In this document: positions 1,344 through 52,787 of the stretch, one piece after another | Layout: each line of letters opens with the position of its first letter | How positions within the stretch are numbered: the first letter of the stretch is position 1 | Virus record (IMG/VR): IMGVR_UViG_3300027844_001828 | Span: 62,001-126,000 of that record | DNA length: 64,000 nucleotides | Strand: one strand, 5' to 3' | Program-made: the position numbers and the translations under genes | The notes under the pieces: generated by a model | Database searches by the model: none | What the model was told of the DNA's origin: nothing | What the model saw: only the letters and a program-made list of their open reading frames with translations

Positions 1344-1368
1344 AGGGAATAGGGCGGCGGCGCTTGAA
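1344..1368 (+). promoter_or_regulatory. SigH-like (AGG-N19-GAA) promoter
   Basis: AGGGAAT-agggcggcggcg-cttGAAA upstream of ORF 1414. Same spacing as about 9 other sites. Confidence 0.5.
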
Positions 1369-1413
1369 AATAACCATATCAATTTTGATTAATAAATATT
1401 AAGGAGAATCCAG

Positions 1414-2541
1414 ATGTCTCAATATTGCAGAACTTCACTAACTATATCAGCAGAGATGATTAACCAGTATGTCGCCCAAGTCCTTGGCATTACCAGTTTA
1501 GACTTGGAAGGGACAGAACAGGAAAAGTCTGATCTGGAGAAGCAAATAGAAAGACTTATTGAAGCTTTTGCAACAGAGAGGGATGTCTCACCTACAAGGG
1601 TCACCACGAGAAGAGCCTTGAGAGAAGAATTCGTAAATAAATACGCCGCCAGTCTTGGGATGTTAACCGCTGATTTAGATGAGAAACTTCGAGAGATATC
1701 ACGAGATACGCCGCCAACCCTTATGGATTTGTTAAATACATATGCGCAAGGTAAGGGCGTCCCATTGGAATGTTTTTATGATCCCAACGGAATCACAGAT
1801 GAAAACTTTGCGCTTTGTGATGGGGCAGAAAAAGGAGCGTCTCAGACGGGGATGTATCATGGAACGTATTATGGGAACCTCAAAGAAACTGTGCAGAAGT
1901 CATCGCAATCTTCATTAACCGAAAACGATGAGGTTATTGATAAAGTATACCTTGCTATTCCACCATCAATCGGATCACAGATTTATGGACAGAGAATGCA
2001 GGATTATTTCTTTGTTGGAACAGTGTCCGATCCAAATGCTTTAGTCACAGAAAGACCGTCTGAACAGCAGATGGAGGAAGACTACGCTGCCAGACAGCGT
2101 GGAGAAGCATCTGTTACGAGACAAGGTAGTGAGAAGAAAATAAAGATGGGCGCACATGATTTCAACAGTAGTGGTGTAGAAGGAAAGTTTGGGGAGCATC
2201 TTAGCGGCCTTGTAGGAGAATTCTTGACAAAAGAGTGGAGAAGGAGAATTGAAGATAAGCTCAAGAGAATATTCGGGAACAAGGGAATAATTGAAGATGC
2301 CTTGAGAAGAAATTACGCCGCCGCAGATGCGGCTGGTGCAGATGCTATAAGCGTCTCAGACTTGGAAAATTTTAGCGTCGAGATACTTCCAGCAAGTCCA
2401 GAATGCGATTTTGCCGTTAAGATAACCGTTGATGTTGTAACGGCAGCGCCGACAGTTACAAGAAACCAGAACGCGGTTCCAACTCCGAGTCCAGCACAGG
2501 GCGTTTCAGACGATCTTGAGCAATCATTAGAAGTCACATAA
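1414..2541 (+). CDS. Hypothetical protein (375 aa, acidic)
   Basis: Long ORF with an AAGGAG RBS. No recognisable motif. Confidence 0.7.
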   Translation: MSQYCRTSLTISAEMINQYVAQVLGITSLDLEGTEQEKSDLEKQIERLIEAFATERDVSPTRVTTRRALREEFVNKYAASLGMLTADLDEKLREISRDTPPTLMDLLNTYAQGKGVPLECFYDPNGITDENFALCDGAEKGASQTGMYHGTYYGNLKETVQKSSQSSLTENDEVIDKVYLAIPPSIGSQIYGQRMQDYFFVGTVSDPNALVTERPSEQQMEEDYAARQRGEASVTRQGSEKKIKMGAHDFNSSGVEGKFGEHLSGLVGEFLTKEWRRRIEDKLKRIFGNKGIIEDALRRNYAAADAAGADAISVSDLENFSVEILPASPECDFAVKITVDVVTAAPTVTRNQNAVPTPSPAQGVSDDLEQSLEVT

Positions 2542-2612
2542 GTTTTTCAACATAGCTTGAAAAAAGTTCGATCTACGATATGTTACTTAGAAAAACTATC
2601 CGGGAAATACCT

Positions 2613-6189: not shown

Positions 6190-6222
6190 TTTTATTGTTC
6201 CATCATTAAACTAAGTTAATTG

Positions 6223-6248
6223 ATTCGCTGTTAGAGCTTGAAATTCCT
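6223..6248 (-). promoter_or_regulatory. SigH-consensus promoter
   Basis: The minus strand reads caAGGAATT-tcaagctctaac-AGCGAATca, closely fitting the B. subtilis SigH consensus (AGGAWWW-N11-12-RNNGAAT). Confidence 0.65.
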
Positions 6249-6293
6249 TGTAGCATAGGTATTGTATAAGAGTATAATCGCATAGGAGAAGTT

Positions 6294-9200: not shown

Positions 9201-9524
9201 CCGTTAACAGTGGTTGGTGGAGTCGGAGATAGGGCAGTTGAAGAGATCATTGAGAAAAGAGAGCAGGAAGGCGAATTTATTGATTTCAAGCACTTCGTAA
9301 ATATCATTGAAGCCAGCGCCGTGACAGTTTCTGTTATTAGGAATTTAGCACAGTCAAGGGCCGGGAACGCTTTTGCACCACTTGGTATAAAAGCAAAAGA
9401 TGCGGAAGACGTATTTACAAATATGAAGAAAGATTTGAAATCAAGAAAAATGAGAGAAAATAGATTCGTTGATACTGATCTTATGAAAGTTTCATATGGA
9501 AAAATTAATGGCGCATCGAAATAA
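6294..9524 (+). CDS. dnaE: DNA polymerase III alpha subunit (C family), with a ~113-aa palm insertion and no C-terminal OB/tau domains
   Basis: PHP HLHVHSYYSLL, GPGRGSAAGSL, PDVDLDFD, RHRGVHAAG, KYDLL, GVFQFE, RPGP, YQEQVM, YGFNKSHS. Confidence 0.97.
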   Translation: MSKKSSQKFVHLHVHSYYSLLESAVPVKGLVKRAVELGQPSIALTDSGACGGLYQFSDVCHENGVKPILGIEIHIVQDMLDTDGTKPQSTAILLAKNKVGWQNICKISSEASIQGYHYAPRADLNLLSENSEGLIVIAGGSRDGLIGNDLLMNKSNIAEKKANWFKDIWGDDFYLEALYHPCPDEPAKELMEKNICKRVFELAEKTNIKCIVSNDVRYLKEKDSVVQDAMTCIKDHKVMKDDERARLPGTGFYLKSADEMEALFPDRPDLLANTVEISDKIEDGIIEKNLDLLPRFSPPDGLGSSEYLRKLVYDGLKKDDLFDKPGYKDRVDYELKVFETCGFVDYFLILDDFVSWAYRQGIGMGPGRGSAAGSLCLYALKVVKLDPIKYDLLFERFFSVDTTYRIHPSCFGLKYKGVDKIEVGTQVQYDLLKRCEDSCSEFDKDVFTLEGKKMNQMGCLDDFLRCFVAFEKSGGKQGDTNECNSSIAYYTGMTSVKPMDIFRPVEEMVAARLSPPDVDLDFDDKRRDEVYVYLKKKYGDRRAVQIATYTLLKARSIVKDVGKALDIGNDWEANQEIKENKMSATLRGEKADKVERPRNTLDRVDALAKFIPSASSFREAYDDSADLRKRVIEGGAYHDICMGIDGAVRHRGVHAAGIVLGNRDIQEVCPLTSITGVTVAQWDKEQVEELGLYKYDLLSVKNIAIISQTLDLIKANRGEDIDIDTIEPDDQRVFKMLNQGKTRGVFQFEGGSVTKLIKNINIDNFNDMVAVNAINRPGPLRAGVGDSYAECKHGHKEIEYLHESMENILKETYGTIIYQEQVMKLSKVMAGFTTSESDGLRKAVGKKKPELMANMKNKFLEGCDAHGIGKSTAIEVWQMIDYFGGYGFNKSHSLAYSFVSYQTAWLKFHYPIEFFSALLTSAIGDEEKTQLYINEACGVGEKGLGVNILPINVNKSTNIYEIEGEAIRCPLTVVGGVGDRAVEEIIEKREQEGEFIDFKHFVNIIEASAVTVSVIRNLAQSRAGNAFAPLGIKAKDAEDVFTNMKKDLKSRKMRENRFVDTDLMKVSYGKINGASK

Positions 9525-9537: not shown

Positions 9538-9565
9538 TTGACACATCATAGAATCATGGTATATT
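9538..9565 (+). promoter_or_regulatory. sigma70-type promoter
   Basis: TTGACA-16 nt-TATATT with an extended TG, upstream of the SSB/RecA operon. Confidence 0.6.
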
Positions 9566-10054: not shown

Positions 10055-10717
10055 ATGGCAGAAGAATTCGATAAGGCGTTCGATAGCGCAACGGTTACTG
10101 AGGGAAACCCCACAGTAAAACCACATAGTCAAGACCCTAGTGTCCCGCCACCTTCACTTGAAAAGAAGAAAGAGCTTATTGCATCAACCGAGACATTCAA
10201 TGACCTATTGAAAGATGTTCAGGACTTGATGGAAGAGCTACCGATTAAGTCCAGAGAAGAATACGCCGGTTTGAGAATAGAGATCAGGGAATGCACACTT
10301 GAGTACGTAGATGATCCATCTCCGCTTGTCCTTAGCCAGCAAATGGCAAAGACCCAGGTTTTCAAGGATAGACTTCTTGAAATAAAGCTCGATGCAGAAA
10401 CCACATTCATTGCCCTCAAGAGAATCTATAATAATTTATTAGATGCTTTTATTGGAATCAGTGAAAACAAGTCTGCCGATAAAAGAAAAGGCGAAGCGTC
10501 TTTAAGATTATCAAGATTTAATTTGATCCTCGCAGAAGCGGAAGCGTTCGCTAATTACTGCCGATCAATCTGCGAAAACCTTGAGAGTCAACGGAATACA
10601 ATTTCTAGAAGAATAACATGTAACGAGCACCGTATTAAAATAGGAGAGTTAGGTGCGGGAATGGGGCAAAATATTTCTGAAAAAATTGACGAAAAAGATC
10701 CCTGGAACAAGGTATAA
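10055..10717 (+). CDS. Coiled-coil protein, possibly a UvsY-like recombination mediator
   Basis: Helical coiled-coil immediately upstream of SSB and RecA. Function inferred from context only. Confidence 0.35.
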   Translation: MAEEFDKAFDSATVTEGNPTVKPHSQDPSVPPPSLEKKKELIASTETFNDLLKDVQDLMEELPIKSREEYAGLRIEIRECTLEYVDDPSPLVLSQQMAKTQVFKDRLLEIKLDAETTFIALKRIYNNLLDAFIGISENKSADKRKGEASLRLSRFNLILAEAEAFANYCRSICENLESQRNTISRRITCNEHRIKIGELGAGMGQNISEKIDEKDPWNKV

Positions 10718-10819
10718 TGACAATTCTTATGGTATAATATACTTATACTGGAGAACCGTGTTAATCCACCCAAAACGGCTAAGATTAACGCAAAAAAATC
10801 CCAACAAAGGAGAAACATA

Positions 10820-12993: not shown

Positions 12994-12995
12994 TT

Positions 12996-13734: not shown

Positions 13735-14505
13735 ATGAAAAAGAAAAAAGCAGGCAGAGTGAAGTTCGGAATTGATAGAGATATTGAAAACGAGCAAGTT
13801 CGAAAATATATAGAGACTGGAGATGAGTTGATCATTGAAGAAGTCTATAAGAAACGAATTCCCACCATTGATCACTTAGGAAGGATTAATTCTTGGATTA
13901 CAGAAGATGCGTCTTCAGAAGTGAACCTTGTTTTTGTCCGGTGTATTCAGTCATATGGCAGGAATGGCAAGACAACTGATTTCAATACATTTTTCTACTC
14001 AAGTGTTAAAAACCATTTCGCTAACCTGTTGAAGAAGAAATACAGGAAGAAGAGAACCACCTTTAGGGGTGATGATCCAAGCATGCAGACGGTATCATTG
14101 GATAGTCCATGCTACGGTGACGATGGTCATGATATAAACCTCCATGAAATCATCCCAGACAACGCTATTGAAGAGAATGACGTTATTACTGAATGCCTGT
14201 CTGAGATATCAGGAGGCAATGAGTCAATCGTTGATATCCTATTAGATTTTGTTGACCTAACCAAAAGGCAGATTGTCAGAAGAGAATTTATCTTTGACAG
14301 AACCTTCCCTTTAATTAGCGGAGACGCCCATGATGATATCGTTCTCGGAATGGGCGTTCCAGCAGAAACGTTTGAGGTTTTGACCTCAAAAGTTAAAAAT
14401 GACAAGGTCTTTTGCAAAATTAAAATAGTTCCCCAGGAATTCATTAGTCATATTAGAGAGAAGATTGAGAGCAACGATGAAGTTCTCCATACTATCAGAA
14501 GATAG
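13735..14505 (+). CDS. Phage RNA polymerase sigma factor (SigH-like region 2/3)
   Basis: FNTFFYSSVKNHFANLLKKKYRKKR resembles region 2.3-2.4 and VSLDSP...INLHEIIPD resembles region 3.2. No obvious region-4 HTH. Confidence 0.75.
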   Translation: MKKKKAGRVKFGIDRDIENEQVRKYIETGDELIIEEVYKKRIPTIDHLGRINSWITEDASSEVNLVFVRCIQSYGRNGKTTDFNTFFYSSVKNHFANLLKKKYRKKRTTFRGDDPSMQTVSLDSPCYGDDGHDINLHEIIPDNAIEENDVITECLSEISGGNESIVDILLDFVDLTKRQIVRREFIFDRTFPLISGDAHDDIVLGMGVPAETFEVLTSKVKNDKVFCKIKIVPQEFISHIREKIESNDEVLHTIRR

Positions 14506-14618
14506 ATCTAATTCCCACCTTGTTTTCGACTAAAAGGGTAATTCTCTATTCTTGTGGTACAATAAAGCTTAAGTCAATTATGCTTTAATAACACTGTATA
14601 TACACAAGGAGAAATAAT

Positions 14619-14948
14619 ATGTCTAATGAAAACACCGACGACGGAATTGTATTAAAGGTTAAGGCCGATGATCCAAATGCGACAGACGAAGAAAGGAAGA
14701 AAAAGTTAAAGTCATTAGCGGGCGCTATCGCTCACGGGCTGAGACAGGCTGGCGAAGTTAAGATTCGCTGTTTCGGAAACGCTACAATTGGCAAAGCTGC
14801 AAAAGCATGTGCTATTGCAAGAGGTATGGTCGCTGTACATGGTTATGACCTTTATATGACTTCATCATTTATTACAGCGGAGATGGGGGACATCACAAAA
14901 ACGGGGATATGTTTTACAGCATTCACAAACGAGAACAGGCCGGAATAA
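14619..14948 (+). CDS. spoVS: SpoVS family (Alba-like) nucleic-acid-binding protein
   Basis: LKV...SLAGAIA...FGNATIGKAAKACAIARGMVAVHGYDL...TGICF aligns with the SpoVS consensus. Confidence 0.9.
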   Translation: MSNENTDDGIVLKVKADDPNATDEERKKKLKSLAGAIAHGLRQAGEVKIRCFGNATIGKAAKACAIARGMVAVHGYDLYMTSSFITAEMGDITKTGICFTAFTNENRPE

Positions 14949-24744: not shown

Positions 24745-25857
24745 ATGGATTACTACGAAATATTAGGAGCCAAGAGGGGAGATACCGCCGCTACGATAAA
24801 GAAAGCGTATCGAAAATTGGCTCATAAGTATCATCCAGATAAAAACCCTGACAATAAAGAGGCGGAAGATAAATTCAAAGATGTCGCCGAGGCATATGAA
24901 GTTTTGTCAGATGAAAAAAAGAAGCCGATTTATGACAAGTTTGGAAAAGAGGGGTTGAAGCGTGGCGGAGGCGGCGGAGGCGGCGGAGGCGGCGGAGGCC
25001 AGGGTCAGGGCTGGGGTGGTTTTGCAGGCTTTAACTTCGGAATGGGACAGGACGATGGGATTGATATCATTCAGGTTCAGATGGGTATTGATGTTTACGC
25101 TGTAGCTTATGGCTCAGATAGGCAATTTAAGATCAATATTAACGACAAGTGCAAAACTTGTGATGGGTCAAGAAAAAAGCCGGGTGGGAAAGAAGAAATT
25201 TGCTCATCGTGCAAGGGCCAGAAATTTATAATAAGAAAGCAGGGCGGAATGATGTTTCAGTTACCCTGCCAAGCCTGTCAAGGCCAAGGTGGCACTTTTG
25301 ATAAATGCGAAAGCTGTCATGGTCATGGGGTCCAGGCAAGGACCATGACTATGAAGGTTAGTATTCCAAAGGGAGCAGGACATGGGATGAAGATAAGACT
25401 CAAGGGAGTCGGTAACTACTCTGTCGGAGCGAATGCTAAGGGACATATTCATTTTATCTTAGTCCTTGCAGAACATGAGTTATTTGCCATCAATGGATCG
25501 GATGTTCATGCTGGGTTGCCAATAACCTTCAAACAAGCCATTCTTGGGGGTGATATAAAGGTTCCGACCTTATATGGCGATGTGGACGTTACCTTACCTA
25601 AAGAGTCGAAGAATGGTGATGTTTTAACGGTTTCTGGATCGGGTGTCCCAAACAAGCCAAATAGTACCGTAAAGGGCGATCAATATGTCCATTTGATAGT
25701 CGATATGCCAAAAGGAGTTTCAGATGAAATTAGAGAAGTTATAAACGGCATTGACGACAGCGGATGTACATACGAAACCATTAATGAATACAATGGCGTA
25801 TGCGAAAATATAAAAAAAGAGATAGGCAGGGCTAATAATGAAGATAAAACTGGCTGA
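24745..25857 (+). CDS. dnaJ: DnaJ (Hsp40) chaperone
   Basis: MDYYEILG...HPD J-domain, G/F linker, four CxxCxGxG-like motifs, C-terminal substrate domain. AGGAG RBS before 24745. Confidence 0.95.
24964..24999 (+). repeat. (GGCGGAGGC)4 poly-Gly tandem repeat in the dnaJ linker
   Basis: Four perfect 9-nt units, in frame. Confidence 0.85.
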
Positions 25858-40108: not shown

Positions 40109-40746
40109 TAACAGTTGATAGGTTATATTTTGGAGATGACTACGAAAAGATTGAGAGAATCAATTTTTTACAAGTTGTGAAATACATCAAACTTGCAAAG
40201 GATCTTTCTGACCCTTTGCTGTTTGTTAGTTCGTCAAAAGTTTTTGATAGAAGTGTTGATCAGTTGTATGATGAAGATACCAAGCCGAACCCAACAGACA
40301 TTTGTGGGAAATTCATTTCTGAATCTGAGAAGAGAGTTTTAGACTATGAACATGGATATGTTTATAGAATTCAAGATTCTATTTCCGATCACATTGAAGA
40401 CTTCAAGGCATTGGCGAGGGAACAAGATCCGTCATTCTCTTCAAAAGAATCGATGTGCCCAATAGATTTCGACTTGTCAATACCGAATGCCGATGCCAAC
40501 TCCTGGTTAATCGGTCAACATAAGATTACTCACATTTGCTCACCATATCAATTTGATATGACAGCTATGTGGGCGGTCCTTGGAGACGGTGGTACTTGCA
40601 GGCTTGATGAAGAGCCGTTTTCTTTTAGAGGCCATGTCGGCCATTTGTTTTCAAAGTATTATAGCAATGATAGAGATAAGTACGAGGATTTTGCTGAATG
40701 GAATAAGAAGAAGGCTATTAAGAAGTTATCTTCATTAAAGGACTGA
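40105..40746 (+). CDS. Hypothetical protein
   Basis: 213-aa coupled ORF. Confidence 0.6.
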   Translation: MITVDRLYFGDDYEKIERINFLQVVKYIKLAKDLSDPLLFVSSSKVFDRSVDQLYDEDTKPNPTDICGKFISESEKRVLDYEHGYVYRIQDSISDHIEDFKALAREQDPSFSSKESMCPIDFDLSIPNADANSWLIGQHKITHICSPYQFDMTAMWAVLGDGGTCRLDEEPFSFRGHVGHLFSKYYSNDRDKYEDFAEWNKKKAIKKLSSLKD

Positions 40747-41450: not shown

Positions 41451-41504
41451 CAGGAGGAAGACGGTTACATTTAGAATTAAAGTGTAACCAAAACCCTTCT
41501 GTTA

Positions 41505-43175: not shown

Positions 43176-43229
43176 AAGGAGATTCTATGACTAAAAAAGA
43201 ATTAAACATGGAAATCCAGGTGATAAAAA

Positions 43230-43676: not shown

Positions 43677-44137
43677 TGGCTGATCAGACTATTCCAAGTT
43701 TAACAGAGGCGACCACAGTATTCGATGCAGACCTTGTATATGTCGCCAGAAAGGGCCTTCAGGGGGGCTTTTCCGATAATCATGCAACTGTGGCCACACT
43801 TGGCCGATTTTTGCGTACAGGCCAAACAGAAGAGAAATCTTCAAATTATGTAATAAGCGTAGCAGAATGTGATAAAAGATGGTTTTCCAATAAGGATTCA
43901 ACACTGTCGATTGAGTTCTCTTTACCACCCGCCGCCGATGGATTAGAAGTTGGTATCGTTTTGGAAGAGAATGAGTCTGTAGTTGTGGCCCCACAAGGGA
44001 CCGATACTTTATTCCCCACCGGAGTATCAGACGGTGTCAAGATAACCGCTTCCTTGGCTGGAGCAACTGTTTATCTACGAGGATTCTCAGAAGGGTGGTG
44101 CATTCTATCCGAAGTTGGCACCTGGGTCACTGTATAA
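43676..44137 (+). CDS. Fibre/baseplate-like protein, paralogue 2
   Basis: TAATG coupling. ECDKRWFSNK...FSLP...YLRGFSEGW...GTW. Confidence 0.65.
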   Translation: MADQTIPSLTEATTVFDADLVYVARKGLQGGFSDNHATVATLGRFLRTGQTEEKSSNYVISVAECDKRWFSNKDSTLSIEFSLPPAADGLEVGIVLEENESVVVAPQGTDTLFPTGVSDGVKITASLAGATVYLRGFSEGWCILSEVGTWVTV

Positions 44138-45744: not shown

Positions 45745-46461
45745 ATGGGGGCCAACCGGCCCCCTAAGCTTTCCAACGATAGGGTCTATGAAATGGAAAT
45801 AGAGCATATTTATTGTAAGAAATGTGGAAAAAACAAGGGGCGGCAACCATCTTTGACTGTCAACCCAATATATTGCGAAGATTGTCGTAAAGGAATCGTA
45901 CCAGAGGATTTTGAGGGAAGCGTTGCAATTTGCATGCTTGGGAAAGCTGGATGCGGAAAAGACACAGTAGCCGACTACCTATGTAGAAATGAACAATTCA
46001 TTAGGATGGCTCTTGCAGATCCAATTAGGGATATTGTTCAAATAGCCCTTGTCAAAGACCATGAAAGCATATGGGACCGAGACAAAAGAGAGGAAGAGCT
46101 TGAAGATTTCCCAGGTTTTACGGTAAGGAAATTGTTACAACTTGTTGGTACAGAGTTGTTTAGGAAAAATGTATCAGAAGACATTTGGGTTCGGAACCTA
46201 ATCCAAAGGCTTGAGCCTGGAAGGAACTATGTTATTACAGACGTGAGATTTCCCAATGAGCTTGATCAGATCCGCAATGAATTTGGCGGCAAGACGATAT
46301 TTGTTAAAGTCGTTCGAGAGGGATGTGAGGGAAAAGACGTTGGAATACAGAATCACGAGTCCGAAAGCTATGACCTTGAAGGCGATATAGTCATAGATAA
46401 TAATGGCTCATTAAAGGATTTGGAGAGGAAAATTGAGAAGGATCTTGTAGAACTAATTTAA
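45745..46461 (+). CDS. Deoxynucleoside monophosphate kinase with an N-terminal Zn ribbon
   Basis: CKKC...CEDC, GKAGCGKDTVA, ALADPIR, RKLLQLVGTE, ITDVRFPNE, HESE. Confidence 0.9.
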   Translation: MGANRPPKLSNDRVYEMEIEHIYCKKCGKNKGRQPSLTVNPIYCEDCRKGIVPEDFEGSVAICMLGKAGCGKDTVADYLCRNEQFIRMALADPIRDIVQIALVKDHESIWDRDKREEELEDFPGFTVRKLLQLVGTELFRKNVSEDIWVRNLIQRLEPGRNYVITDVRFPNELDQIRNEFGGKTIFVKVVREGCEGKDVGIQNHESESYDLEGDIVIDNNGSLKDLERKIEKDLVELI

Positions 46462-46479: not shown

Positions 46480-47928
46480 ATGGCCGATTCCCCTGTAACA
46501 ACCTTAACGAAAAATAATTCCCCGGATTTTAACGACATCATGTATGTCGGTCAAGATAATGGGTCCAATTGGTATTTAGACAAAAAAGCAGATTTTGGAA
46601 CGATTCAAGATCATGCCACCTCTATAAATACAATTAATAAGGGTGGCAACTACACAATCCCCATATCTGAATGCGATGGGCGCTGGATTTCAAATAAAAG
46701 CACCTCCGGTCATACCATATATAGCCTGCCAGAAGGAAAAGAGGGATATCAAATATCTTTTGTTATTGAAGCCAATCAATGGCTTGAGATCAATCCAATT
46801 TCTACAGATTCTATTTTACCAACGGGCGTCACTGTAAATGGCAATGTTTATTCCCAATCGATTGGAAGTACGATAGTCCTGAGAGGATTTGAGGGTGGAT
46901 GGTTAATCTCTTCCATGTACGGGACCTGGGATAATCTTGGAAGCTCAAGTAGTTCTTCGGAAGAAATTGTAGCTGCAATTAAAACCATCATGCCAGACGG
47001 TGGAGGCGATTATACAACTCTTGCTTTATGGGAGGATTGGGCAGATGATCAGGTAAGTACGGATCAATGGGCAGAGTGTTATGATGGCGTTGCTGATATG
47101 GGAATCTTTACTATTTCTGGCTGGACCGGGACGCCTTCAGCCACAGAATACCCAAGAATTTATGCTCCATTAGCAGAAAGGCATAACGGGACATCAGGAA
47201 GTGCAGGAGCATGGATTGAAGATGACTCGGCAACAACCGCAATTCTTGTCCAAGTTGATTTTACAAGAATTGAAGGTATTAGAATAGTCGCTTCAGCAGG
47301 ATTTAGTAACAGATCAATAAAAGTTTACAACGCAGATAATGCAATAATAGATTCGAACCTTTTGGACTCAACGACAAGTGCTGGTGGCATAGCGATTGAG
47401 GTGCGACAAGGAATAGAAAATACGTATACTGTTACGATTAGAAATAATATCATATATGGAGACGCTTATGGCGATGGACTTTATGTCTATCCCCATTCTA
47501 CCGGCCTTGGAACTTACACTCTTAATTCATTTATATATAACAATACAATTGATAATTGCTCTCTTCATGGAATTCATCTATGGGAATACGCAGCATCTGG
47601 TCTTCCTGTGCATAATACTACATGCGAAAATAATGTAGTTACAAATACCGCCACTAAAGATTTTGAAATTATTATGACAAATGGGACGATAACTACGAAT
47701 AATAATTGCTCTGAAGATGACACCGCTGATGATGATGGTGGATCTGATCACTTAATTAGTCAGACTCCTGGCGACTTGTTCGTAACAGAAGGATCTGATC
47801 ATAACCTTAAGACCGGATCAAATGCTATTGACGCCGGTAAGACAATTGGCACATTTGCAATTGACGCACTCAAGGTCGCCAGACCACAGGGCGCAAGTTG
47901 GGATATCGGAGCATTGGAAAAAGTTTAA
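46480..47928 (+). CDS. Fibre-like protein paralogue 3 with a C-terminal parallel beta-helix (tailspike/adhesin-like)
   Basis: Same N-terminal domain as 43230/43676, poly-Ser linker, IRNNII/IYNNTI repeats, LKTGSNAIDAG...RPQGASWDIGALE. Confidence 0.75.
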   Translation: MADSPVTTLTKNNSPDFNDIMYVGQDNGSNWYLDKKADFGTIQDHATSINTINKGGNYTIPISECDGRWISNKSTSGHTIYSLPEGKEGYQISFVIEANQWLEINPISTDSILPTGVTVNGNVYSQSIGSTIVLRGFEGGWLISSMYGTWDNLGSSSSSSEEIVAAIKTIMPDGGGDYTTLALWEDWADDQVSTDQWAECYDGVADMGIFTISGWTGTPSATEYPRIYAPLAERHNGTSGSAGAWIEDDSATTAILVQVDFTRIEGIRIVASAGFSNRSIKVYNADNAIIDSNLLDSTTSAGGIAIEVRQGIENTYTVTIRNNIIYGDAYGDGLYVYPHSTGLGTYTLNSFIYNNTIDNCSLHGIHLWEYAASGLPVHNTTCENNVVTNTATKDFEIIMTNGTITTNNNCSEDDTADDDGGSDHLISQTPGDLFVTEGSDHNLKTGSNAIDAGKTIGTFAIDALKVARPQGASWDIGALEKV

Positions 47929-48196
47929 CATAGCTTTACTTTTCCGAAAGACAGAGTTATATTGACCCAAATTATTCTAAGGAGGGTTTACATGGCTTCA
48001 GTAAAGGTTGAAAACGCGACAGACATAATCGAGAGATATGAGTCCAGACTCACCAGAAATCAGAAGAGAATCCTCAAATCTATGCAGACGGGAATTTCAT
48101 CATGTTGAGAATCGAAAGGTTTAACCCTGTTTGGACACTCATGAGTCCGAAATTACTGGAAGCGGTTATTGTTCAGAATGTGTAAATGATAGTTAA

Positions 48197-48339
48197 TAAT
48201 GCCCTTTTGGTGGGCGGGTCCAACCTGAGTCAAACCACTATGCAAGGCTGCATGCTTAAGGGTCAACGGGTTAGCTGAGCACCCTACCTACCGCTTCCTA
48301 CACAAATTACGAGCTTACCCGCGCCCCAAAAAGGCATTA
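48197..48339 (+). ncRNA. Unassigned structured RNA (rod-like, 6S-like size)
   Basis: The ends pair (TAATGCC-TTTTGG-GCGGGT with ACCCGC-CCAAAA-GGCATTA) around internal hairpins. Confidence 0.45.
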
Positions 48340-49035
48340 CTAAGGAGAGAGTAAAGTGGATAGCCAGTTGAGAAAAGAATTTGAGGATTGTATCAAAAAT
48401 TGGACATGGGAAGATATTCATAAATCCATGAAGGCGGTAGAGGATTATCCTGACATTGTAGAATTCTTTTGGGGAGAGAACATGCTCAGAGGTCGAGGGT
48501 TTTATCAGGAATCTCTCCTGGGAAGATATTCAGGTGGCTTTGAAAGAAGTGGAGTCCTTTATTGATATCGAAGTATTCTTTGGAGATAAAAAATGCCCAT
48601 GCACAAGCACAGGTGTTTCTTTCAAGGATGGTATAAAAACAGTGTGTTGCGCTCATTGCGGAAAAGTAAAGTGGAGGGTGGGGCCACAGGATCTTACCGG
48701 AAGTCCAGCGTATGGATGCTAATACAAAGATATTTAAAACTACTATTTGGAGACAAAATTAATAACTGGAAAACAAGAGCGTTGATTGGTACGGTTGAAG
48801 AAGTGAGAATTCGTGAAAGAAACTCAACTTGGAAGCGTATGGTAGAATGTGTGGGAAATTGGAAGAAGTGGAAAAGGAAAGGGGACAATGATGAACGATA
48901 ATTACGATAAACCATGAAGGCAAAGTCAGGGCGAGATAAGGATAAGCCCCGGTCGAACATCGGGAACTGGCTCCGTAGATACGTTGAGAGAAGAACGTGT
49001 CGAAAGTGGGAACGAACAAAAACTTCAAAGCTGAC

Positions 49036-49063
49036 TTGACAAATCGAAAAGTCATGGTATAAT
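49036..49063 (+). promoter_or_regulatory. Strong sigma70 promoter of the tRNA array
   Basis: TTGACA-16 nt-TATAAT with extended -10 TG. Confidence 0.85.
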
Positions 49064-49140
49064 AAACACATTGAAAGCAGGAGTTCTTCTCGAAAGTTTA
49101 GTAGCAGTCTAACACAACACAACCTAACAAGGTTAAGAAA

Positions 49141-49233
49141 ATGAAAAGGTTCAGTTTACAATCAAGTCAGCCGTCATTGCCCGAATCGCTCTCCGAGCCA
49201 TTCGTTGCTCCCTGCTGCCAGGTTGTTGCATGA
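49141..49233 (+). CDS. Leader peptide (30 aa) MKRFSLQSSQPSLPESLSEPFVAPCCQVVA
   Basis: Short ORF between the promoter and the terminator. Codons 5-20 encode only S/L/Q/P/E. Confidence 0.7.
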   Translation: MKRFSLQSSQPSLPESLSEPFVAPCCQVVA

Positions 49234-49254
49234 GTCTTTAAGTAGATGTGCCAC

Positions 49255-49306
49255 AAAGGCCTCTGAAGCTGGGAGTAATTCCAGCTTCAGAGGCCTTTTT
49301 GTTTTT
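49255..49306 (+). terminator. Attenuator terminator
   Basis: 15-bp perfect stem GGCCTCTGAAGCTGG/CCAGCTTCAGAGGCC followed by TTTTTGTTTTT. Confidence 0.9.
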
Positions 49307-49314
49307 AGTTTTGA

Positions 49315-49326
49315 GATCTTTGAAAA
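49315..49326 (+). promoter_or_regulatory. rrn-type boxA antitermination element
   Basis: GATCTTTGAAAA directly before the first tRNA. Confidence 0.65.
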
Positions 49327-49340
49327 TTGAATAGTATATA

Positions 49341-49419
49341 AAATTGGTTGTATTATGCATAGTATGTCCACGTTTCGTGGACTTACTGTGTATTATCGGA
49401 GTGTAGGAAAGTCTGGTCA
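49341..49419 (+). repeat. 79-bp perfect direct repeat, copy 1 (hairpin plus tRNA-Pro 5' end)
   Basis: Identical to 50011-50089. Confidence 0.95.
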
Positions 49420-49474
49420 TCGCGCTTGTTCCGGAAACAAGAGAACGAAAGTTCGAATCTTTCCACCCAGACCA
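49397..49474 (+). tRNA. tRNA-Pro(CGG), atypical/chimeric
   Basis: Stem CTTGT/ACAAG, loop TC-CGG-AA, T-arm GAAAG-TTCGAAT-CTTTC, ACCA end. Acceptor mismatches G2:A71 and A4:C69. Confidence 0.6.
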
Positions 49475-49498
49475 GTTTTAATAATAGGAGATTATAAA

Positions 49499-49690
49499 AT
49501 GAATAAAATAGATGATATAGCGAATGATATTATTGCAGGAAGTGAATTGCCAAATTTAATTGAGTTAGTTCCTGAGAATTTTGTTCTTCTTGGAGAGATT
49601 AAAATGGCAATCATGAAAGCTGTTAAGATTGGGTTGAATATGGAAATAGAATTGCAAAAAGAATTTATTCTTAGTGGCAATAAGACTTAA
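49499..49690 (+). CDS. Small hypothetical protein
   Basis: MNKIDDIAND... with an AGGAG RBS. Confidence 0.5.
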   Translation: MNKIDDIANDIIAGSELPNLIELVPENFVLLGEIKMAIMKAVKIGLNMEIELQKEFILSGNKT

Positions 49691-49702
49691 GGAGAAATAA
49701 TA

Positions 49703-49792
49703 ATGTTAGAAATATCTATTGGTTTGGTAGTTGTAATAGTCGCATCATGTTCTTGGCTCGTATGGTTTATGGCAAAGAACGTATGGGGATAA
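49703..49792 (+). CDS. 29-aa single-TM peptide
   Basis: MLEISIGLVVVIVASCSWLVWFMAKNVWG, preceded by TAAGACTTAAGGAGA. Confidence 0.5.
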   Translation: MLEISIGLVVVIVASCSWLVWFMAKNVWG

Positions 49793-49808
49793 GACTTAAG
49801 GAGATACA

Positions 49809-50012
49809 ATGAAAGGGTTGCATTATGATGATGTTGGAAATCGTAAGTTAATTGAAACTTTGGTTACTGTTTTACTTCAAGATGGATTGAAGGGAGAAGA
49901 TATGATTGGGGTTTTAACTAAGAATGGAGCGTTTAAAGTATTGAATGGAGATCAATTATGTGCGGTTGCAGAAGCAATGGAAGAAGTTTATAAGGATATG
50001 TTGTTGAAATAA
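49809..50012 (+). CDS. Small hypothetical protein
   Basis: Preceded by the same TAAGACTTAAGGAGA 15-mer. Confidence 0.55.
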   Translation: MKGLHYDDVGNRKLIETLVTVLLQDGLKGEDMIGVLTKNGAFKVLNGDQLCAVAEAMEEVYKDMLLK

Positions 50013-50089
50013 ATTGGTTGTATTATGCATAGTATGTCCACGTTTCGTGGACTTACTGTGTATTATCGGAGTGTAGGAAAGTCTGGTCA
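50011..50089 (+). repeat. 79-bp perfect direct repeat, copy 2 (ends in a truncated tRNA-Pro 5' fragment)
   Basis: Identical to 49341-49419. Confidence 0.95.
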
Positions 50090-50108
50090 GCGATACCAAT
50101 TTATAAGA

Positions 50109-50184
50109 TGCCTCGTAGCATAACTGGTAATGCAACAGCCTCTGAAGCTGTTTTATCTTGGTTCAAATCCAAGCGGGGTAGCCA
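50109..50184 (+). tRNA. tRNA-Gln(CTG)
   Basis: U1-A72, anticodon arm ACAGC-CTCTGAA-GCTGT, T-arm CTTGG-TTCAAAT-CCAAG, GCCA. Confidence 0.92.
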
Positions 50185-50190
50185 TTTTAT

Positions 50191-50267
50191 AGGGATGAGG
50201 GCTTGTTGGTAAGCCGCATGCTCTGGAAGCATGAGTACTCTGGGTTCGACTCCCAGTATCCTGACCA
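50191..50267 (+). tRNA. tRNA-Pro(TGG), atypical
   Basis: CATGC-TCTGGAA-GCATG, CTGGG-TTCGACT-CCCAG, ACCA. A1:G72 mismatch, C33, A37. Confidence 0.8.
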
Positions 50268-50286
50268 TTTTCAGATGTTATTAGAC

Positions 50287-50314
50287 TTGACATTCACCTG
50301 TTTTCATGTATATT
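50287..50314 (+). promoter_or_regulatory. Internal sigma70-type promoter
   Basis: TTGACA-16 nt-TATATT upstream of tRNA-Ser. Confidence 0.5.
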
Positions 50315-50400
50315 AATTCCATTAGAGCTTGAAGACTGGCAGAAAACTGAAATTATGAATATCTTTACCGAAAGAATGCAAGCAGAGATAGGGTAACATC

Positions 50401-50490
50401 GGAGGGGTGGCTGAGTGGCTAAAGGCACCTGTCTTGAATACAGGAGGGCGTGAAAGCGTCCCGTGGGTTCGAATCCCACTCCCTCTGCCA
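50401..50490 (+). tRNA. tRNA-Ser(TGA)
   Basis: CCTGT-CTTGAAT-ACAGG, long variable arm, GTGGG-TTCGAAT-CCCAC, GCCA. Confidence 0.95.
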
Positions 50491-50493
50491 AAT

Positions 50494-50581
50494 GGCCTCG
50501 TGGCGTAACTGGCAGACGCGGCAGGATTTAAAATCCTGTGTCCGAAAGGGTGTTAGGGTTCGACTCCCTACGAGGTCACCA
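50494..50581 (+). tRNA. tRNA-Leu(TAA)
   Basis: CAGGA-TTTAAAA-TCCTG, long variable arm, TAGGG-TTCGACT-CCCTA, ACCA. Confidence 0.93.
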
Positions 50582-50631
50582 ATTAAAAGGTTATATGATT
50601 TGTTATTCAGAAATATATAGTGAGGTGAATA

Positions 50632-51042
50632 ATGGATTGGTATAAAAAATCAAATGTAGATCTTGAGCAGAGAATAAAAATTCTTGTTCCACAAATGGTC
50701 ACTAAGTCACAAAGTGTTTACGACGCCTGGGATCAAGATGAAGATGGAATTGATGTATGGCTTGGGTGTGGTGGGATATGTCAAGACATTGCTGATGGAA
50801 TATGTGATGTTTTGACAATGAATGGAATTGATTGCACTTCTGTTTCGGCCCAAGTTGGAGAGCAGCATGTATGGGCTATAGCTTATGAAGGAAGCGAGGC
50901 TTTTGATTTAGATATTCATCCTGGAAATTACGAAACTGGTGGTGGGTATAATTGGAAAAAGATACCAGGGGTTGTATTTACCACTGATATGGTGTCAATT
51001 GAACGAAACAGTTTTTTTGATCCTGAGGATGAAGATTATTAG
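50632..51042 (+). CDS. MDWYK-leader protein with a transglutaminase/papain-like Cys-His-Asp pattern
   Basis: GICQDIA...QHVWA...DLDI. SigH-like promoter at 50588-50613. Confidence 0.55.
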   Translation: MDWYKKSNVDLEQRIKILVPQMVTKSQSVYDAWDQDEDGIDVWLGCGGICQDIADGICDVLTMNGIDCTSVSAQVGEQHVWAIAYEGSEAFDLDIHPGNYETGGGYNWKKIPGVVFTTDMVSIERNSFFDPEDEDY

Positions 51043-51092
51043 GAAGAGTTGGCCGAAAGATCGCAGGGTAGCGGCTACTGTCTCTTCTGCCA
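51042..51092 (+). pseudogene. Internally deleted tRNA-Ser remnant
   Basis: GGAAGAG/CTCTTCT acceptor stem plus GCCA, but only 51 nt with the anticodon arm missing. Confidence 0.65.
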
Positions 51093-51108
51093 TTTTATAG
51101 TTTTATGT

Positions 51109-51179
51109 GGAAAGCATCCGGCTGGATGAGGAGGTGCCCAATTGATCAGGGCCGTGGGTTCGAATCCCACTCTATAGCA
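51109..51179 (+). pseudogene. Chimeric tRNA remnant (5' of one tRNA fused to 3' of another)
   Basis: GGAAAGCATCCGGCTGGATGAGGAG is joined to a variable arm plus GTGGGTTCGAATCCCAC. The acceptor strands do not pair and there is no anticodon arm. Confidence 0.55.
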
Positions 51180-51247
51180 ACTTTGTATTTGTTTTGGGCT
51201 TGAGATATAGGCTTGTTGAGATATTGTAATGGTTAAAGAATATAAAT

Positions 51248-51324
51248 GACCCGTTGGACGAATTGGTTAAGTCGTCAGGTTTTCAACCTGAAGATTGCGG
51301 GTTCAAATCCCGCACGGGCCACCA
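51248..51324 (+). tRNA. tRNA-Glu(TTC)
   Basis: TCAGGT-TTTCA-ACCTGA anticodon arm, GCGGG-TTCAAAT-CCCGC, ACCA. A2:C71 mismatch. Confidence 0.9.
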
Positions 51325-51329
51325 GTATT

Positions 51330-51472: not shown

Positions 51473-51563
51473 TTTTATTTTTTTAAAGATAGTTTGTATA
51501 CTAATAACAAGGGTCTAAGAAGTGTTTTCATGAATAATATGAAAACCAAATGGAGATCAATTT

Positions 51564-51773
51564 ATGAGAGTTATAGAAAATAATAAAAAGACCGTGAAGG
51601 TCGCCGATGATAAGACAAAGGCGATGGACATTATAAAAAGTCTTCTTGAAAGATATAGGAATAGTGAGTTGCCTGTTATCATTAACAACATATGCCAAGC
51701 GATCATTGATGAGAATCAAAGACAACCTGGACCTGGTGATATTTTTGAAGAGAAAGTAAAATCAACTGACTAA
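51564..51773 (+). CDS. Small hypothetical protein
   Basis: GGAG RBS. SigH-like promoter at 51510-51535. Confidence 0.55.
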   Translation: MRVIENNKKTVKVADDKTKAMDIIKSLLERYRNSELPVIINNICQAIIDENQRQPGPGDIFEEKVKSTD

Positions 51774-51778
51774 ATTAA

Positions 51779-51807: not shown

Positions 51808-51870
51808 AAGTTTTAAAATGAAGGTGTCTTTACCATTTCTGAAGAATACTTTATACAAAGGAGTATTTAT

Positions 51871-52407
51871 ATGAAAATAAAGAGCAAAGAACATCTTGAG
51901 AATGTGGTTAAAGAATCTGCAAGTGTTTCAGAGGTTCAGCGTAAATTGGGATATAAACCATCAGGTGGTATACATAAATTTCTTAAAGGTAAGTTTAAAG
52001 AATTTGAAATAGACACTTCTCATTTCACAGGTCAAGGGTGGTCGCTTGGGAAATCAAGGGAGACGGATGAAATTGTTGATATAGTTTCTCGAAAAATAGA
52101 ATCTCCATGGGAACATGTTTTTAGGAAAGGTAACCATAAAACACAAAATGAGACCTTGATTAGACGTTTGATAAGAAGCGGCAAAAGAGAATATAAATGT
52201 GAAGATTGTGGGGTTAAAAAGTGGGGCGACAAACCTCTACGATTGCAACTTGATCATATAAATGGAGACAATTCTGATTGTCAAGAAATAAACTTAAAGA
52301 TTATTTGCCCTAATTGTCATTCTCAAACTGAAACATTTTCAAGAGGAATGAGGGAAAGTAGAAGTTATTATAGAAACAAATGGTGGAAACAATTATCTAT
52401 GAATTAA
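51871..52407 (+). CDS. HNH homing endonuclease (tRNA-associated)
   Basis: IDTSHFTGQGW, CEDC, LQLDHINGDNSD...NLKIICPNCHSQT. Confidence 0.92.
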   Translation: MKIKSKEHLENVVKESASVSEVQRKLGYKPSGGIHKFLKGKFKEFEIDTSHFTGQGWSLGKSRETDEIVDIVSRKIESPWEHVFRKGNHKTQNETLIRRLIRSGKREYKCEDCGVKKWGDKPLRLQLDHINGDNSDCQEINLKIICPNCHSQTETFSRGMRESRSYYRNKWWKQLSMN

Positions 52408-52408
52408 T

Positions 52409-52495
52409 GGTGCTGTGATGGAATTGGCATACATCTATGGTTGAGAATCATAGGCTCGAAAGAGATTGAGGGTTCGAGTCCCTACGAGGCCACCA
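52409..52495 (+). tRNA. tRNA-Leu(GAG), chimeric acceptor stem
   Basis: TATGG-TTGAGAA-TCATA arm, variable arm, TTCGAGT loop, ACCA. G4:G69 and C5:A68 mismatches. Confidence 0.75.
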
Positions 52496-52787
52496 AATTT
52501 GGATAAGCAATGAAATATACAAAAAAACTATTTAAAGTCCCTATAAATGCCAACTTCGCATCTTCTTTTATAAAGACGGCGAACATTCAGAAGCGAATTA
52601 AAGACGAGAAAGATTGTGGTCATTATATTTTAAGGACTGAATTTTGGAAAATGTTTGGCGGCGATAGGATAATGTATTTGAGAACCTAAAAGATAACGAT
52701 GTTACAATCTCAGACATAAATGCAGGATATTTGTGGTTATATAGACAAATATACTATATACAATAATCCTTTCATAAGACTGATAAC

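What the first reader, a model, noticed from the sequence alone, without database searches (positions are those of the whole stretch)
1344..52749. Phage SigH-like sigma factor with a readable regulon (AGG-N19-GAA promoters)
An exactly spaced AGG-N19-GAA motif lies just upstream of genes at 1344, 6248 (minus strand), 25713, 40685, 41452, 43177, 46415, 50588, 51510 and 51822, with one mismatch at 52724. It resembles the B. subtilis SigH consensus (AGGAWWW-N11-12-RNNGAAT). These genes are mostly virion-like or WYK/KxA-leader proteins, whereas replication and tRNA genes have TTGACA/TATAAT promoters. The encoded sigma (13735-14505) has a SigH-like region 2. Inference: a two-tier early/late programme.
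Basis: partly seen in the sequence, partly recalled or inferred. Interest (0 to 1): 0.7.

Follow-up and report, generated by a model that had tools for sequence, protein, structure and literature searches.

The report
Conserved second promoter class in jumbo phage

Summary
The AGG-N19-GAA strings exist where stated, but the bare motif is at chance in the window (44 found, 42.4 expected). Restricted to intergenic DNA 10-105 nt upstream of start codons genome-wide, spacing 19 stands out: 15 against 3.8 for GAA and 22 against 6.1 for G[A/T]A. Coding-embedded copies are not enriched.

The true element is (A)AGG-N19(18-20)-G-W-A-Y-A-W-W. It is conserved at three orthologous positions in relatives whose proteins are only about 40-50% identical. 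It has the architecture of published SigH promoters, and its best copy precedes a phage spoVS homolog.

about 5 are credible (1344, 51510, 51822, 41452, 43177). Sites 25713, 40685, 46415, 6248(-), 52724 and 50588 are unsupported or unlikely. The two best window sites (10710, 14535) were missed because they read GTA.
- **Main promoter class:** a host-type GCTTGACA-N16-TATAGT with at least 57 sites.
- **The "sigma" (13735-14505):** it has a genuine sigma-2 domain but a family-specific alpha/beta C-terminal domain instead of region 4. It is not specifically SigH-like.
- **What remains inferred:** the sigma-to-motif link. A clean early/late or virion split is not shown.

The parts
13735..14505 (+). 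Sigma-like protein (256 aa): N-terminal sigma-2 domain (aa 15-103), flexible linker, and a family-specific alpha/beta C-terminal domain (aa ~144-255) in place of region 4
   Evidence: phrog_1740 sigma factor, E = 1e-4. 7 of 26 family members hit Pfam Sigma70_r2. 26 of 26 hit TIGR02937 below its cut-off. AF2 model pLDDT 82, with aa 15-103 matching SigB, SigI6 and sigmaE at Z 10.9-11.8, and the top 27 hits all sigma factors. The CTD model has pLDDT 88, no PDB match at Z >= 5, and the domain occurs only in proteins of ~255-285 aa with this architecture.
14535..14563 (+). Class-2 promoter (AGG-N19-GTACAAT) upstream of the spoVS-like gene.
   Evidence: The same element, AGG-N18/19-GTA(C/T/A)AAT, is found at the orthologous place in 6 relatives (L013-L018). 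Spacers are only 6-9 of 19 identical. The AGG keeps its distance to the -10 element but not to the sigma stop codon.
10710..10738 (+). Class-2 promoter (AGG-N19-GTATAAT) upstream of gene 10820-11650, which precedes RecA, primase and sigma
   Evidence: Conserved in L013 (N19), L014 (N20) and L015 (N18). L018 keeps the -10 element but has a TTGACT -35. RNA-contig depth steps up here in three metatranscriptomes and an X14 contig starts at 10758. A terminator-like hairpin lies at 11678-11707.
1344..1372 (+). Class-2 candidate (AGG-N19-GAAAATA), 41 nt upstream of ORFan 1414-2541, which is followed by a RecD2-like helicase
   Evidence: Intergenic and fits the strict pattern. It cannot be footprinted because the downstream gene has no homologs.
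51510..51538 (+). Class-2 candidate (AGG-N19-GAATAAT) upstream of the 69-aa ORF 51564-51773
Evidence: Strict pattern and intergenic. An X13 RNA contig begins at 51550.
51822..51850 (+). Class-2 candidate (AGG-N19-GAATACT) upstream of the HNH endonuclease gene 51871-52407
   Evidence: Intergenic; 7.3 bits with the relatives-only PWM. The gene matches phrog_10822 HNH endonuclease, E = 4e-47. An X13 RNA contig begins at 51872.
58511..58539 (+).
   Evidence: Strict pattern and intergenic.
41452..41480 (+). Possible class-2 site (AGGAGG...GAATTAA) upstream of 41505-43175. It overlaps a hairpin (GGTTACA...TGTAACC).
   Evidence: Intergenic. The -10 is acceptable by SigH standards but scores low with the relatives-only PWM, 4.3 bits.
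43177..43205 (+). Possible class-2 site (AGGAG...GAATTAA) upstream of 43230-43676, a member of the tailspike-anchor family. The AGGAG could instead be the SD of a 17-codon mini-ORF.
50588..50616 (+).
6220..6248 (-).
25713..25741 (+).
40685..40713 (+).
   Evidence: (-11.9 bits).
46415..46443 (+). Unsupported as a class but not excluded.
52724..52752 (+).
   Evidence: -1.9 bits. RNA contigs of two runs begin at 52788.
9538..9565 (+). Class-1 (host sigmaA-type) promoter TTGACA-N16-TATATT with TG. It is the first promoter upstream of the block that ends with the sigma gene.
6238..6265 (+). Class-1 promoter of the PolIII-alpha gene (6294-9524)
49033..51230 (+). Three class-1 promoters (PWM windows starting at 49033, 50284 and 51197) ahead of the tRNA genes at 49397-51324
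14619..14948 (+). spoVS-like gene directly downstream of sigma and of the best class-2 promoter
   Evidence: phrog_35646 sporulation protein, E = 3e-9. Orthologs in six relatives (L013-L018) carry PF04232 SpoVS.

Best explanation
The window belongs to a ~235-253 kb uncultivated jumbo phage from seawater. The phage uses two promoter classes.

Class 1 is GCTTGAMA-N16-(TG-n)TATAGT. It has at least 57 sites, lies in front of tRNAs, replication genes and many small ORFs, and is read by the host primary sigma.

Class 2 is (A)AGG-N19(18-20)-G-W-A-Y-A-W-W, with roughly 16-22 sites. Its AGG sits in the register of TTG in a promoter with a 17-bp spacer.

Most likely, class 2 is read by host core RNA polymerase carrying the phage sigma-like protein (13735-14505). 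In this model the sigma-2 domain reads the -10 element and the family-specific C-terminal domain, not a region-4 helix-turn-helix, reads or positions the AGG.

The sigma gene would first be transcribed from the class-1 promoter at 9538 and then reinforced from the class-2 promoter at 10710. Class 2 drives a mixed middle/late set: tail-fibre and tailspike genes, giant tail genes, the gene before RecA, and the spoVS-like gene.

Shown: the two motif classes, their conservation, and the domain make-up of the protein. Inferred: who reads class 2, and its timing.
For: The motif is real:
- The N19 peak is specific to intergenic, sense-strand upstream DNA.
- It replicates outside the window.
- It emerges de novo when anchoring on the -10 element alone.
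- In seven relatives' loci, AGG-Nk-G[AT]A[CTA]A peaks at k = 19, 12 against about 2.

The motif is conserved at three orthologous promoters despite 40-50% protein identity and unconserved spacers.

For activity in situ there is a weak hint: a depth step at about 10.7 kb and a contig end at the hairpin 11678-11707.

For the factor:
- A sigma-2 fold at Z 10.9-11.8, with the top 27 hits all sigma factors.
- The protein family is syntenic in all 7 relatives' loci obtained via their sigma homologs, and a class-2 promoter lies immediately downstream of the sigma gene in 6 of them.
- Class 1 looks like the host-type class that must act before any phage protein exists.
- Precedent: phage-encoded sigmas with their own promoter classes (SPO1 gp28 and gp34, T4 gp55, from general knowledge) and phage SigF/SigG homologs (PMC9429907).
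Against: - No experiment or structure links this protein to the motif.
- The protein lacks a recognisable region 4, so how a -35-position element would be read is unknown.
- The -10 of class 2 is compatible with a primary-sigma -10. At one orthologous promoter, L018 has TTGACT in place of AGG with the same -10.
- The motif equals the host SigH type in Bacillota, so a host factor could read it.
- Classes 1 and 2 are not clearly mutually exclusive or separated by module.
- The metatranscriptome evidence is at contig level and low depth.
Confidence: 0.45

Rival explanations
1. Class 2 is read by a host alternative sigma of the SigH type. The phage borrows a host transition-state regulon logic, and spoVS may have been captured with its promoter. 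The phage sigma-like protein would then do something else, such as reading an unidentified late class or modulating the host.
For: The architecture matches mapped or assigned C. difficile SigH promoters, AAAGG(A)-N18/19-GAA(T/A), including spoVS. spoVS is SigH-dependent in B. thuringiensis (PMC8510167). Low GC, strong AGGAG Shine-Dalgarno sequences and an R-n-G-n -16 region in class 1 are compatible with a Bacillota-like host.
Against: The host is unknown and the phage is abundant in seawater metagenomes. The best-conserved copies read GTAYAAT, which departs from the GAAT core of SigH promoters; GTA variants are only low-scoring in that table. Making fibre genes depend on a stationary-phase host sigma would be a fragile strategy. 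A conserved phage sigma sits next to the best site.
Confidence: 0.2
2. Class 2 promoters are read by the host primary sigma through their TATAAT-like -10, which has G or TG upstream. The AGG is then a box for a phage activator or sigma-appropriation factor (T4 MotA/AsiA logic), or merely a tolerated weak -35.
For: The -10 elements in relatives are near-perfect (G)TGTATAAT or GTACAAT. L018 has a TTGACT -35 with the same -10 at the orthologous promoter. The AGG sits exactly in the -35 register.
Against: The AGG is conserved at fixed spacing across diverged phages, which argues for a specific reader. In this phage many copies have A at -12 (GAATAAT), which is suboptimal for a primary sigma. No MotA/AsiA-like gene was identified, though none was searched for exhaustively.
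Confidence: 0.2
3. The motif is a compositional or chance artefact: SD-like AGG plus A-rich sequence near gene starts.
For: The whole-window count is at chance. The de novo EM search did not return the motif on its own.
Against: The spacing-19 peak is sharp and specific to intergenic sense DNA, and sites within 10 nt of the start were excluded. It replicates outside the window and in other phages. It is conserved at three orthologous positions with unconserved spacers.
Confidence: 0.05

Closest known systems
SigH-dependent promoters of Bacillota
   Same: The -35 is (A)AGG(A). The spacing from AGG to GAA is 18-19 nt, and the -10 begins GAA(T/A). A spoVS gene lies downstream of such a promoter.
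   Different: The best-conserved phage copies read GTA(C/T)AAT, a TATAAT-like hexamer, rather than GAAT. The -35 is often AGGG or AGGT rather than AGGA. The reading factor is unknown and the host is not known to be a Bacillota member.
Phage-encoded sigma cascades (SPO1 gp28 and gp33/34; from general knowledge)
   Same: A large lytic phage uses host-type early promoters plus a phage sigma that redirects host core RNAP to a distinct class. The gp28 -35 also begins AGG (AGGAGA).
   Different: The gp28 -10 is TTTNTTT. Here the -10 is TATAAT-like. The protein lacks a recognisable region 4, and timing classes are not established.
Phage-encoded sporulation-like sigma factors (SigF/SigG homologs in Bacillus phages; PMC9429907)
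   Same: A sigma-70-family gene is carried by large phages, next to a sporulation-family gene (spoVS).
   Different: Those proteins are clear SigF/SigG homologs with full domain sets. This family reaches only sub-threshold region-2 hits and has a novel C-terminal domain.
T4 gp55 (late sigma consisting essentially of a sigma-2-like domain; from general knowledge)
   Same: A divergent phage sigma in which only the region-2-like part is recognisable.
   Different: gp55 promoters are -10-only (TATAAATA) and need gp33 and the sliding clamp. Here an upstream AGG element is conserved and a second folded domain is present.
SigI of Clostridium thermocellum (8i23/8i24)
   Same: A sigma-2 domain is combined with a non-canonical C-terminal domain that replaces classical sigma-4. 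It is among the top structural hits for the N-terminal domain.
   Different: The C-terminal domain here shows no detectable similarity to SigI-C or to any PDB chain.

Membership tests
Sigma-70 family RNA polymerase sigma factor | Region 2 (sigma-2 domain) fold and sequence signature | tested here: met
   VIA-align Z = 11.8 to S. aureus SigB and 10.9 to SigI6 and E. coli sigmaE over aa 15-103, rmsd 2.7-3.8 A. The top 27 hits are all sigma factors. Pfam Sigma70_r2 hits 7 of 26 members. TIGR02937 hits 26 of 26, all below its cut-off.
Sigma-70 family RNA polymerase sigma factor | Region 4 helix-turn-helix (sigma-4) that reads the -35 element | tested here: not met
   The C-terminal model (pLDDT 88) is alpha/beta (H H H E H E E H H). 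No PDB chain reaches Z >= 5, the best being 4.0 to Alba. Sigma-4 chains appear only at noise level, Z about 3. All Foldseek E-values exceed 0.03. No Pfam or NCBIfam region-4 hit was found.
Sigma-70 family RNA polymerase sigma factor | Binds core RNAP and confers promoter-specific initiation | not testable with these tools
No biochemical data exist.
SigH (Bacillota transition-state sigma; TIGR02859 / PRK08295-type models) | Scores above the curated cut-off of a SigH model, or is closer to SigH than to other sigma groups | tested here: not met
   The window protein hits only TIGR02937, a Bacteroidetes-type model and a BldN-type model, all weakly. In the family, 2 of 26 hit TIGR02859 (E about 1e-3) and 7 of 26 hit NF006147 (PRK08295.1-4, E down to 1e-7), all below their cut-offs and in region 2 only. 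That PRK08295 corresponds to SigH is my recollection. The structural hits do not favour SigH.
SigH-type promoter class | -35 AGG(A) and -10 GAA(T), 18-19 nt apart | tested here: met
   Intergenic AGG-N19-GAA is 15 against 3.8. The extended form is GAAWAWW. The published C. difficile SigH promoters that I counted by hand show N18/19.
SigH-type promoter class | GAAT core invariant in the -10 | tested here: not met
   The conserved copies read GTACAAT, GTATAAT or GTATATA. GAA and GTA interchange at one orthologous promoter.
SigH-type promoter class | Transcription starts about 10-12 nt downstream of GAA and depends on the sigma | tested here: inconclusive
   Only low-depth metatranscriptome contigs are available. 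Contig starts lie 16-40 nt after GAA/GTA/CAA at 51510, 51822, 52724 and 10710, and some contigs read through.
Two-tier early/late phage transcription programme | The two promoter classes partition between early/replication genes and virion genes | tested here: not met
   Class 2 precedes both fibre/tail genes (genome 7982, 15839, 128694; window 43177) and replication-module genes (window 1344, 10710, 14535). There is no difference by module or gene length. Co-occurrence OR is 0.46, p = 0.10.
SPO1 gp28-type middle promoters | -35 AGGAGA with -10 TTTNTTT | tested here: not met
   The -10 here is G-W-A-Y-A-W-W. The gp28 consensus is from general knowledge.

The most novel reading that the evidence does not exclude
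This family of uncultivated jumbo phages encodes a sigma factor in which region 4 has been replaced by a new alpha/beta domain found nowhere else. This domain, not a helix-turn-helix, reads or positions the AGG at -35. The result is a phage-private, SigH-like promoter class whose -10 remains close enough to the primary-sigma type that promoters can switch class by changing only the -35 element, as seen in L018.
Probability: 0.3. Interest if true: 0.75.

Novelty: new variant of a known kind. Interest (0 to 1): 0.55.

Why it matters
Phage-encoded sigma factors with private promoter classes are a classic way of timing infection, but almost all known examples come from a few cultured phages.

Here a promoter class can be read directly from metagenomic sequence and validated by conservation across phages that share only 40-50% protein identity. 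The candidate reader is a sigma-2 protein without a recognisable region 4. If the link holds, it would be a new solution for -35 recognition and a handle for annotating transcription units in uncultured jumbo phages.

The resemblance to SigH promoters and the adjacent spoVS homolog also raise the possibility that these phages interact with host transition-state or sporulation-type regulation.

Tried and rejected
- **Near and protein searches of cultured phages** found no relative of the sigma or of the 556-aa protein. PolIII-alpha is at most 35% identical to any cultured-phage homolog.
- **IMG/VR and GTDB genome scans** with the sigma profile found nothing.
- **De novo EM** on intergenic DNA returned class 1 and a palindromic repeat, but not class 2 on its own. 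Seeded EM converged to aaAGG-N19-GAAtaaa with a likelihood similar to noise motifs. The case therefore rests on the spacing tests and conservation.
This PWM over-weights GTAYAAT.
- **Footprinting of site 1344** failed because the downstream gene is an ORFan.
- **Virion gene searches:** Terminase_6N and sheath Pfam models did not hit the genome. PHROGs and Pfam left most candidate virion genes unnamed.
- **Metatranscriptome contigs** are too shallow to map TSSs.
- **The WYK-leader idea:** 50632 and 52788 share the N-terminal WYK but are not detectable paralogs.
- **A reading of the C-terminal half as a divergent region-4 HTH**, which I first suspected from the alignment, was not borne out by the models.
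Full report
**What the window is.** The window is bases 62001-126000 of a single 235,624-bp IMG/VR virus record. CheckV estimates the record at 93% complete, and an identical sigma protein also occurs on a 252,658-bp contig. It holds 8 tRNA genes, with 11 in the whole genome. GC content is about 0.41, and nearly all genes lie on the + strand.

The DNA is held almost completely by a dozen seawater or marine metagenome runs and partly by three seawater metatranscriptomes. It has no close relative among 50,697 cultured-phage records. PolIII-alpha is at most 35% identical to its best matches there. The Bacillus framing of the finding is therefore not given by the data.

Gene content of the window:
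- a RecD2-like helicase, PolIII-alpha, RecA, a DnaG-type primase and SbcCD
- RecJ, DnaJ, a DnaQ-like exonuclease and a dNMP kinase
- PhoH and a spoVS-like gene
- an HNH endonuclease
- two giant ORFs with no homologs

Outside the window, giant tail or baseplate-like genes lie at 1-33 kb. More replication genes lie at 38-62 kb.

**Check of the observation.** Over the whole window the bare motif is at chance: 44 matches against 42.4 +/- 6.2 in shuffles.

I built a gene model of 257 genes and used other spacings as the control.
- In the 100 nt upstream of starts, sense strand, N19 gives 21 hits against about 8 for N8-N30. The antisense strand shows nothing.
- In intergenic sense DNA, N19 gives 25 against 11.4.
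- With the stricter requirement of a fully intergenic motif 10-105 nt from a start, AGG-N19-GAA gives 15 against 3.8 (p about 1e-5). AGG-N19-G[AT]A gives 22 against 6.1 (p about 5e-7). Coding-embedded copies give 7 against 5.1, which is not significant.
- Anchoring only on a -10-like heptamer (139 intergenic anchors), AGG at N19 is the most enriched upstream trimer at any offset, 11 against 1.5, p = 7e-7. It ranks ahead of the GCTTGAC signal.

Roughly two thirds of the intergenic copies are in excess of chance.

**What the element is.** De novo EM on intergenic DNA first returns a very strong host-type promoter, GCTTGaAAt-N13-G-n-TATAgTA, that is, TTGACA-N16-TATAGT with an R-n-G-n -16 region. 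It has 57 sites at z > 0.5 and 74 PWM hits. These sites precede tRNAs, PolIII-alpha, the helicase, DnaJ, RecJ, the exonuclease and many small ORFs.

The second class became clear from relatives. The sigma protein has 25 metagenomic homologs at 35-79% identity. I fetched seven loci around them. Synteny is conserved: PolIII-alpha, several genes, RecA, primase, sigma, a SpoVS-family gene, several genes, SbcCD.

Three orthologous promoters carry the element.
- **Between sigma and the spoVS-like gene.** The window and six relatives all carry AGG-N18/19-GTA(C/T/A)AAT. The 19-nt spacers are only 6-9 of 19 identical, except in the closely related pair L014/L015. The AGG keeps its distance to the -10 element but not to the sigma stop codon. 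It is noncoding in the window, an Arg codon in L017 and a Gly codon elsewhere.
- **Upstream of the gene before RecA.** The window (10710), L013, L014 and L015 have AGG-N18-20-GTATA(A/T)(T/A). L018 keeps the same -10 but has a TTGACT -35.
- **Upstream of a fibre-like gene.** The sequence is GTATATA in this phage (genome 128694), GAACAAT in L020 and GAATATA in L021, each exactly 19 nt after AGG.

In the relatives' upstream regions, AGG-Nk-G[AT]A[CTA]A peaks at k = 19, 12 against about 2.

- **Credible:** 1344, 51510 and 51822.
- **Possible:** 41452 and 43177. Both begin AGGAG. Site 43177 overlaps a 17-codon mini-ORF and 41452 overlaps a hairpin.
- **Unlikely, 50588:** only 15 nt separate the -10 from the ATG, so the SD would lie outside the transcript.
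- **Unlikely, 52724:** it reads CAA in place of GAA.
- **Unlikely, 6248(-):** it is the reverse complement of sequence adjoining the -35 box of the class-1 promoter at 6238-6265.
- **Unlikely, 25713, 40685 and 46415:** these are coding-embedded, and that class of sites shows no enrichment.
- **Missed:** 10710 and 14535, the two best sites in the window, and 58511.

**Relation to SigH promoters.** Table 3 of PMC7438776 lists C. difficile promoters assigned to SigH. Those I counted by hand read AAAGG(A)-N18/19-GAA(T/A), including spoVS. The listed sequences run about 10-12 nt beyond GAA, which I take to end at the mapped TSS. A few low-scoring entries have GTA.

spoVS is also SigH-dependent in B. 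thuringiensis (PMC8510167). It is notable that the best phage copy precedes a spoVS homolog. The conserved GTAYAAT copies, however, depart from the GAAT core.

**The sigma-like protein.**
- **Sequence:** Pfam gives nothing for the window protein even at E = 10. PHROGs gives a weak sigma hit. In the family alignment A1, 7 of 26 members hit Sigma70_r2. All 26 hit TIGR02937 below its cut-off, and minorities hit PRK08295-type, SigH, SigE, SigK, SigX or SigI models, always in region 2 only.
- **N-terminal domain:** the AF2 model has pLDDT 82. Residues 15-103 match the sigma-2 domains of SigB (Z = 11.8), SigI6 and sigmaE (both 10.9), sigma-32 and AlgU. The top 27 hits are all sigma factors.
- **C-terminal domain:** when aa 140-256 is modelled alone, the model has pLDDT 88 and pTM 0.76. 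It is an alpha/beta domain with no PDB match at Z >= 5.
- **Distribution of the C-terminal domain:** its profile finds only 14 representatives among 1.84 billion proteins. The meaningful ones are all proteins of ~255-285 aa with the same architecture, or fragments.

The protein is therefore a sigma-70-family member by region 2. It lacks a recognisable region 4 and is not specifically SigH-like.

**Programme.** Class-2 sites precede several kinds of gene.
- Tail or fibre genes: genome 7982, 15839, 127440 and 128694, and window 43177. Genes 43230, 43676 and 46480 share an N-terminal domain. The beta-helix of 46480 recurs in 130361 and 134140.
- Replication-module genes: window 1344, 10710 and 14535.
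- An HNH endonuclease and small ORFs.

The classes do not separate by module or by gene length, and co-occurrence is only mildly depleted (OR 0.46, p = 0.10). A two-class system is therefore supported. A clean early/late or virion regulon is not.

The sigma gene lies downstream of both a class-1 promoter (9538) and a class-2 promoter (10710). This would allow host-driven onset followed by self-reinforcement if the protein reads class 2.

**Expression evidence.** Only Logan contigs of three metatranscriptomes were available. Depth rises at about 10,650-10,760 in all three runs. One X14 contig starts at 10758, about 12 nt after the predicted start. An X13 contig ends at 11727, just past a 13-bp-stem hairpin at 11678-11707. 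Contigs also begin at 51550, 51872 and 52788. Other contigs read through the sites, and DNA contamination cannot be excluded. This evidence is weak.

**Verdict.**
- The promoter class is real (about 0.85).
- That the phage sigma-like protein reads it is the best but unproven explanation (about 0.45).
- The rivals are a host SigH-type sigma (0.2), the host primary sigma plus a -35 activator (0.2) and chance (0.05).
- This is a new variant of a known kind: a phage sigma with a private promoter class.
- The most novel admissible reading is that a new domain replaces region 4 for -35 recognition.

Noticed in passing
Outside the window: genome 205110, 214079, 224272, 224375, 227926, 234101 (L010:10110, L011:4079, L011:14272, L011:14375, L011:17926, L012:9101): Six copies of a 26-bp perfect or near-perfect palindrome, CACTGTATAAAACATTTTATACAGTG, with conserved flanks (GG(C/T)T before, GGACCGAAACG after). 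All lie in long intergenic stretches of the small-ORF region. They could be an operator-like site or a repeat element of unknown role.
   Followed up: partly
window 14619-14948; orthologs in L013-L018: A spoVS-family gene sits immediately downstream of the sigma gene in this phage and in six of seven relatives. spoVS is a SigH-regulon gene in Bacillus and C. difficile.
   Followed up: partly
window 25838-30628 and 30628-35112: Two abutting giant ORFs (1596 and 1494 aa) have no Pfam or PHROG match. They share only a ~300-aa C-terminal region at 28% identity. Function unknown.
   Followed up: partly
window 43230-43676, 43676-44137, 46480-47928; genome 130361-131413, 134140-138228: A modular tailspike/fibre family. 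Three window genes share a ~150-aa N-terminal domain. The right-handed beta-helix of 46480-47928 recurs once in 130361-131413 and four times in tandem in the 1362-aa protein.
   Followed up: partly
L014:829-4245, L014:6892-9228, L015:177-5000, L013:8965-9987; window 51871-52407: Homing elements vary between relatives. There are inteins with LAGLIDADG domains in PolIII-alpha and RecA of L014 and L015, and an RRXRR/HNH gene inserted between primase and sigma in L013. In this phage an HNH endonuclease lies inside the tRNA cluster.
   Followed up: no
L018:~7060-7100, compared with window 10710-10738: At the orthologous promoter of the gene before RecA, L018 keeps the -10 element (GTGTATAAT) but has a sigmaA-type TTGACT -35 in place of AGG. 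This is an apparent evolutionary switch of promoter class.
   Followed up: partly
window 52788: RNA contigs of two independent metatranscriptomes (X13, X14) begin at exactly the same base. This could be a real 5' end or an assembly effect.
   Followed up: no
window 47929-49396: About 1.4 kb has no convincing ORF and no Rfam family. It contains a strong class-1 promoter (PWM window from 49033) about 360 nt before the first tRNA.
   Followed up: no
window 41462-41488 and 43187-43240: The possible promoter at 41452 overlaps a hairpin (GGTTACA, 13 nt, TGTAACC) just after the stop of the preceding gene. The one at 43177 overlaps a 17-codon mini-ORF with its own AGGAG that ends inside the start of gene 43230.
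   Followed up: no
whole record: No terminase or sheath Pfam model hits the 235.6-kb record. The same phage appears on a 252.7-kb contig elsewhere, so the record is probably missing about 17 kb, or its head genes are too divergent to recognise.
   Followed up: partly
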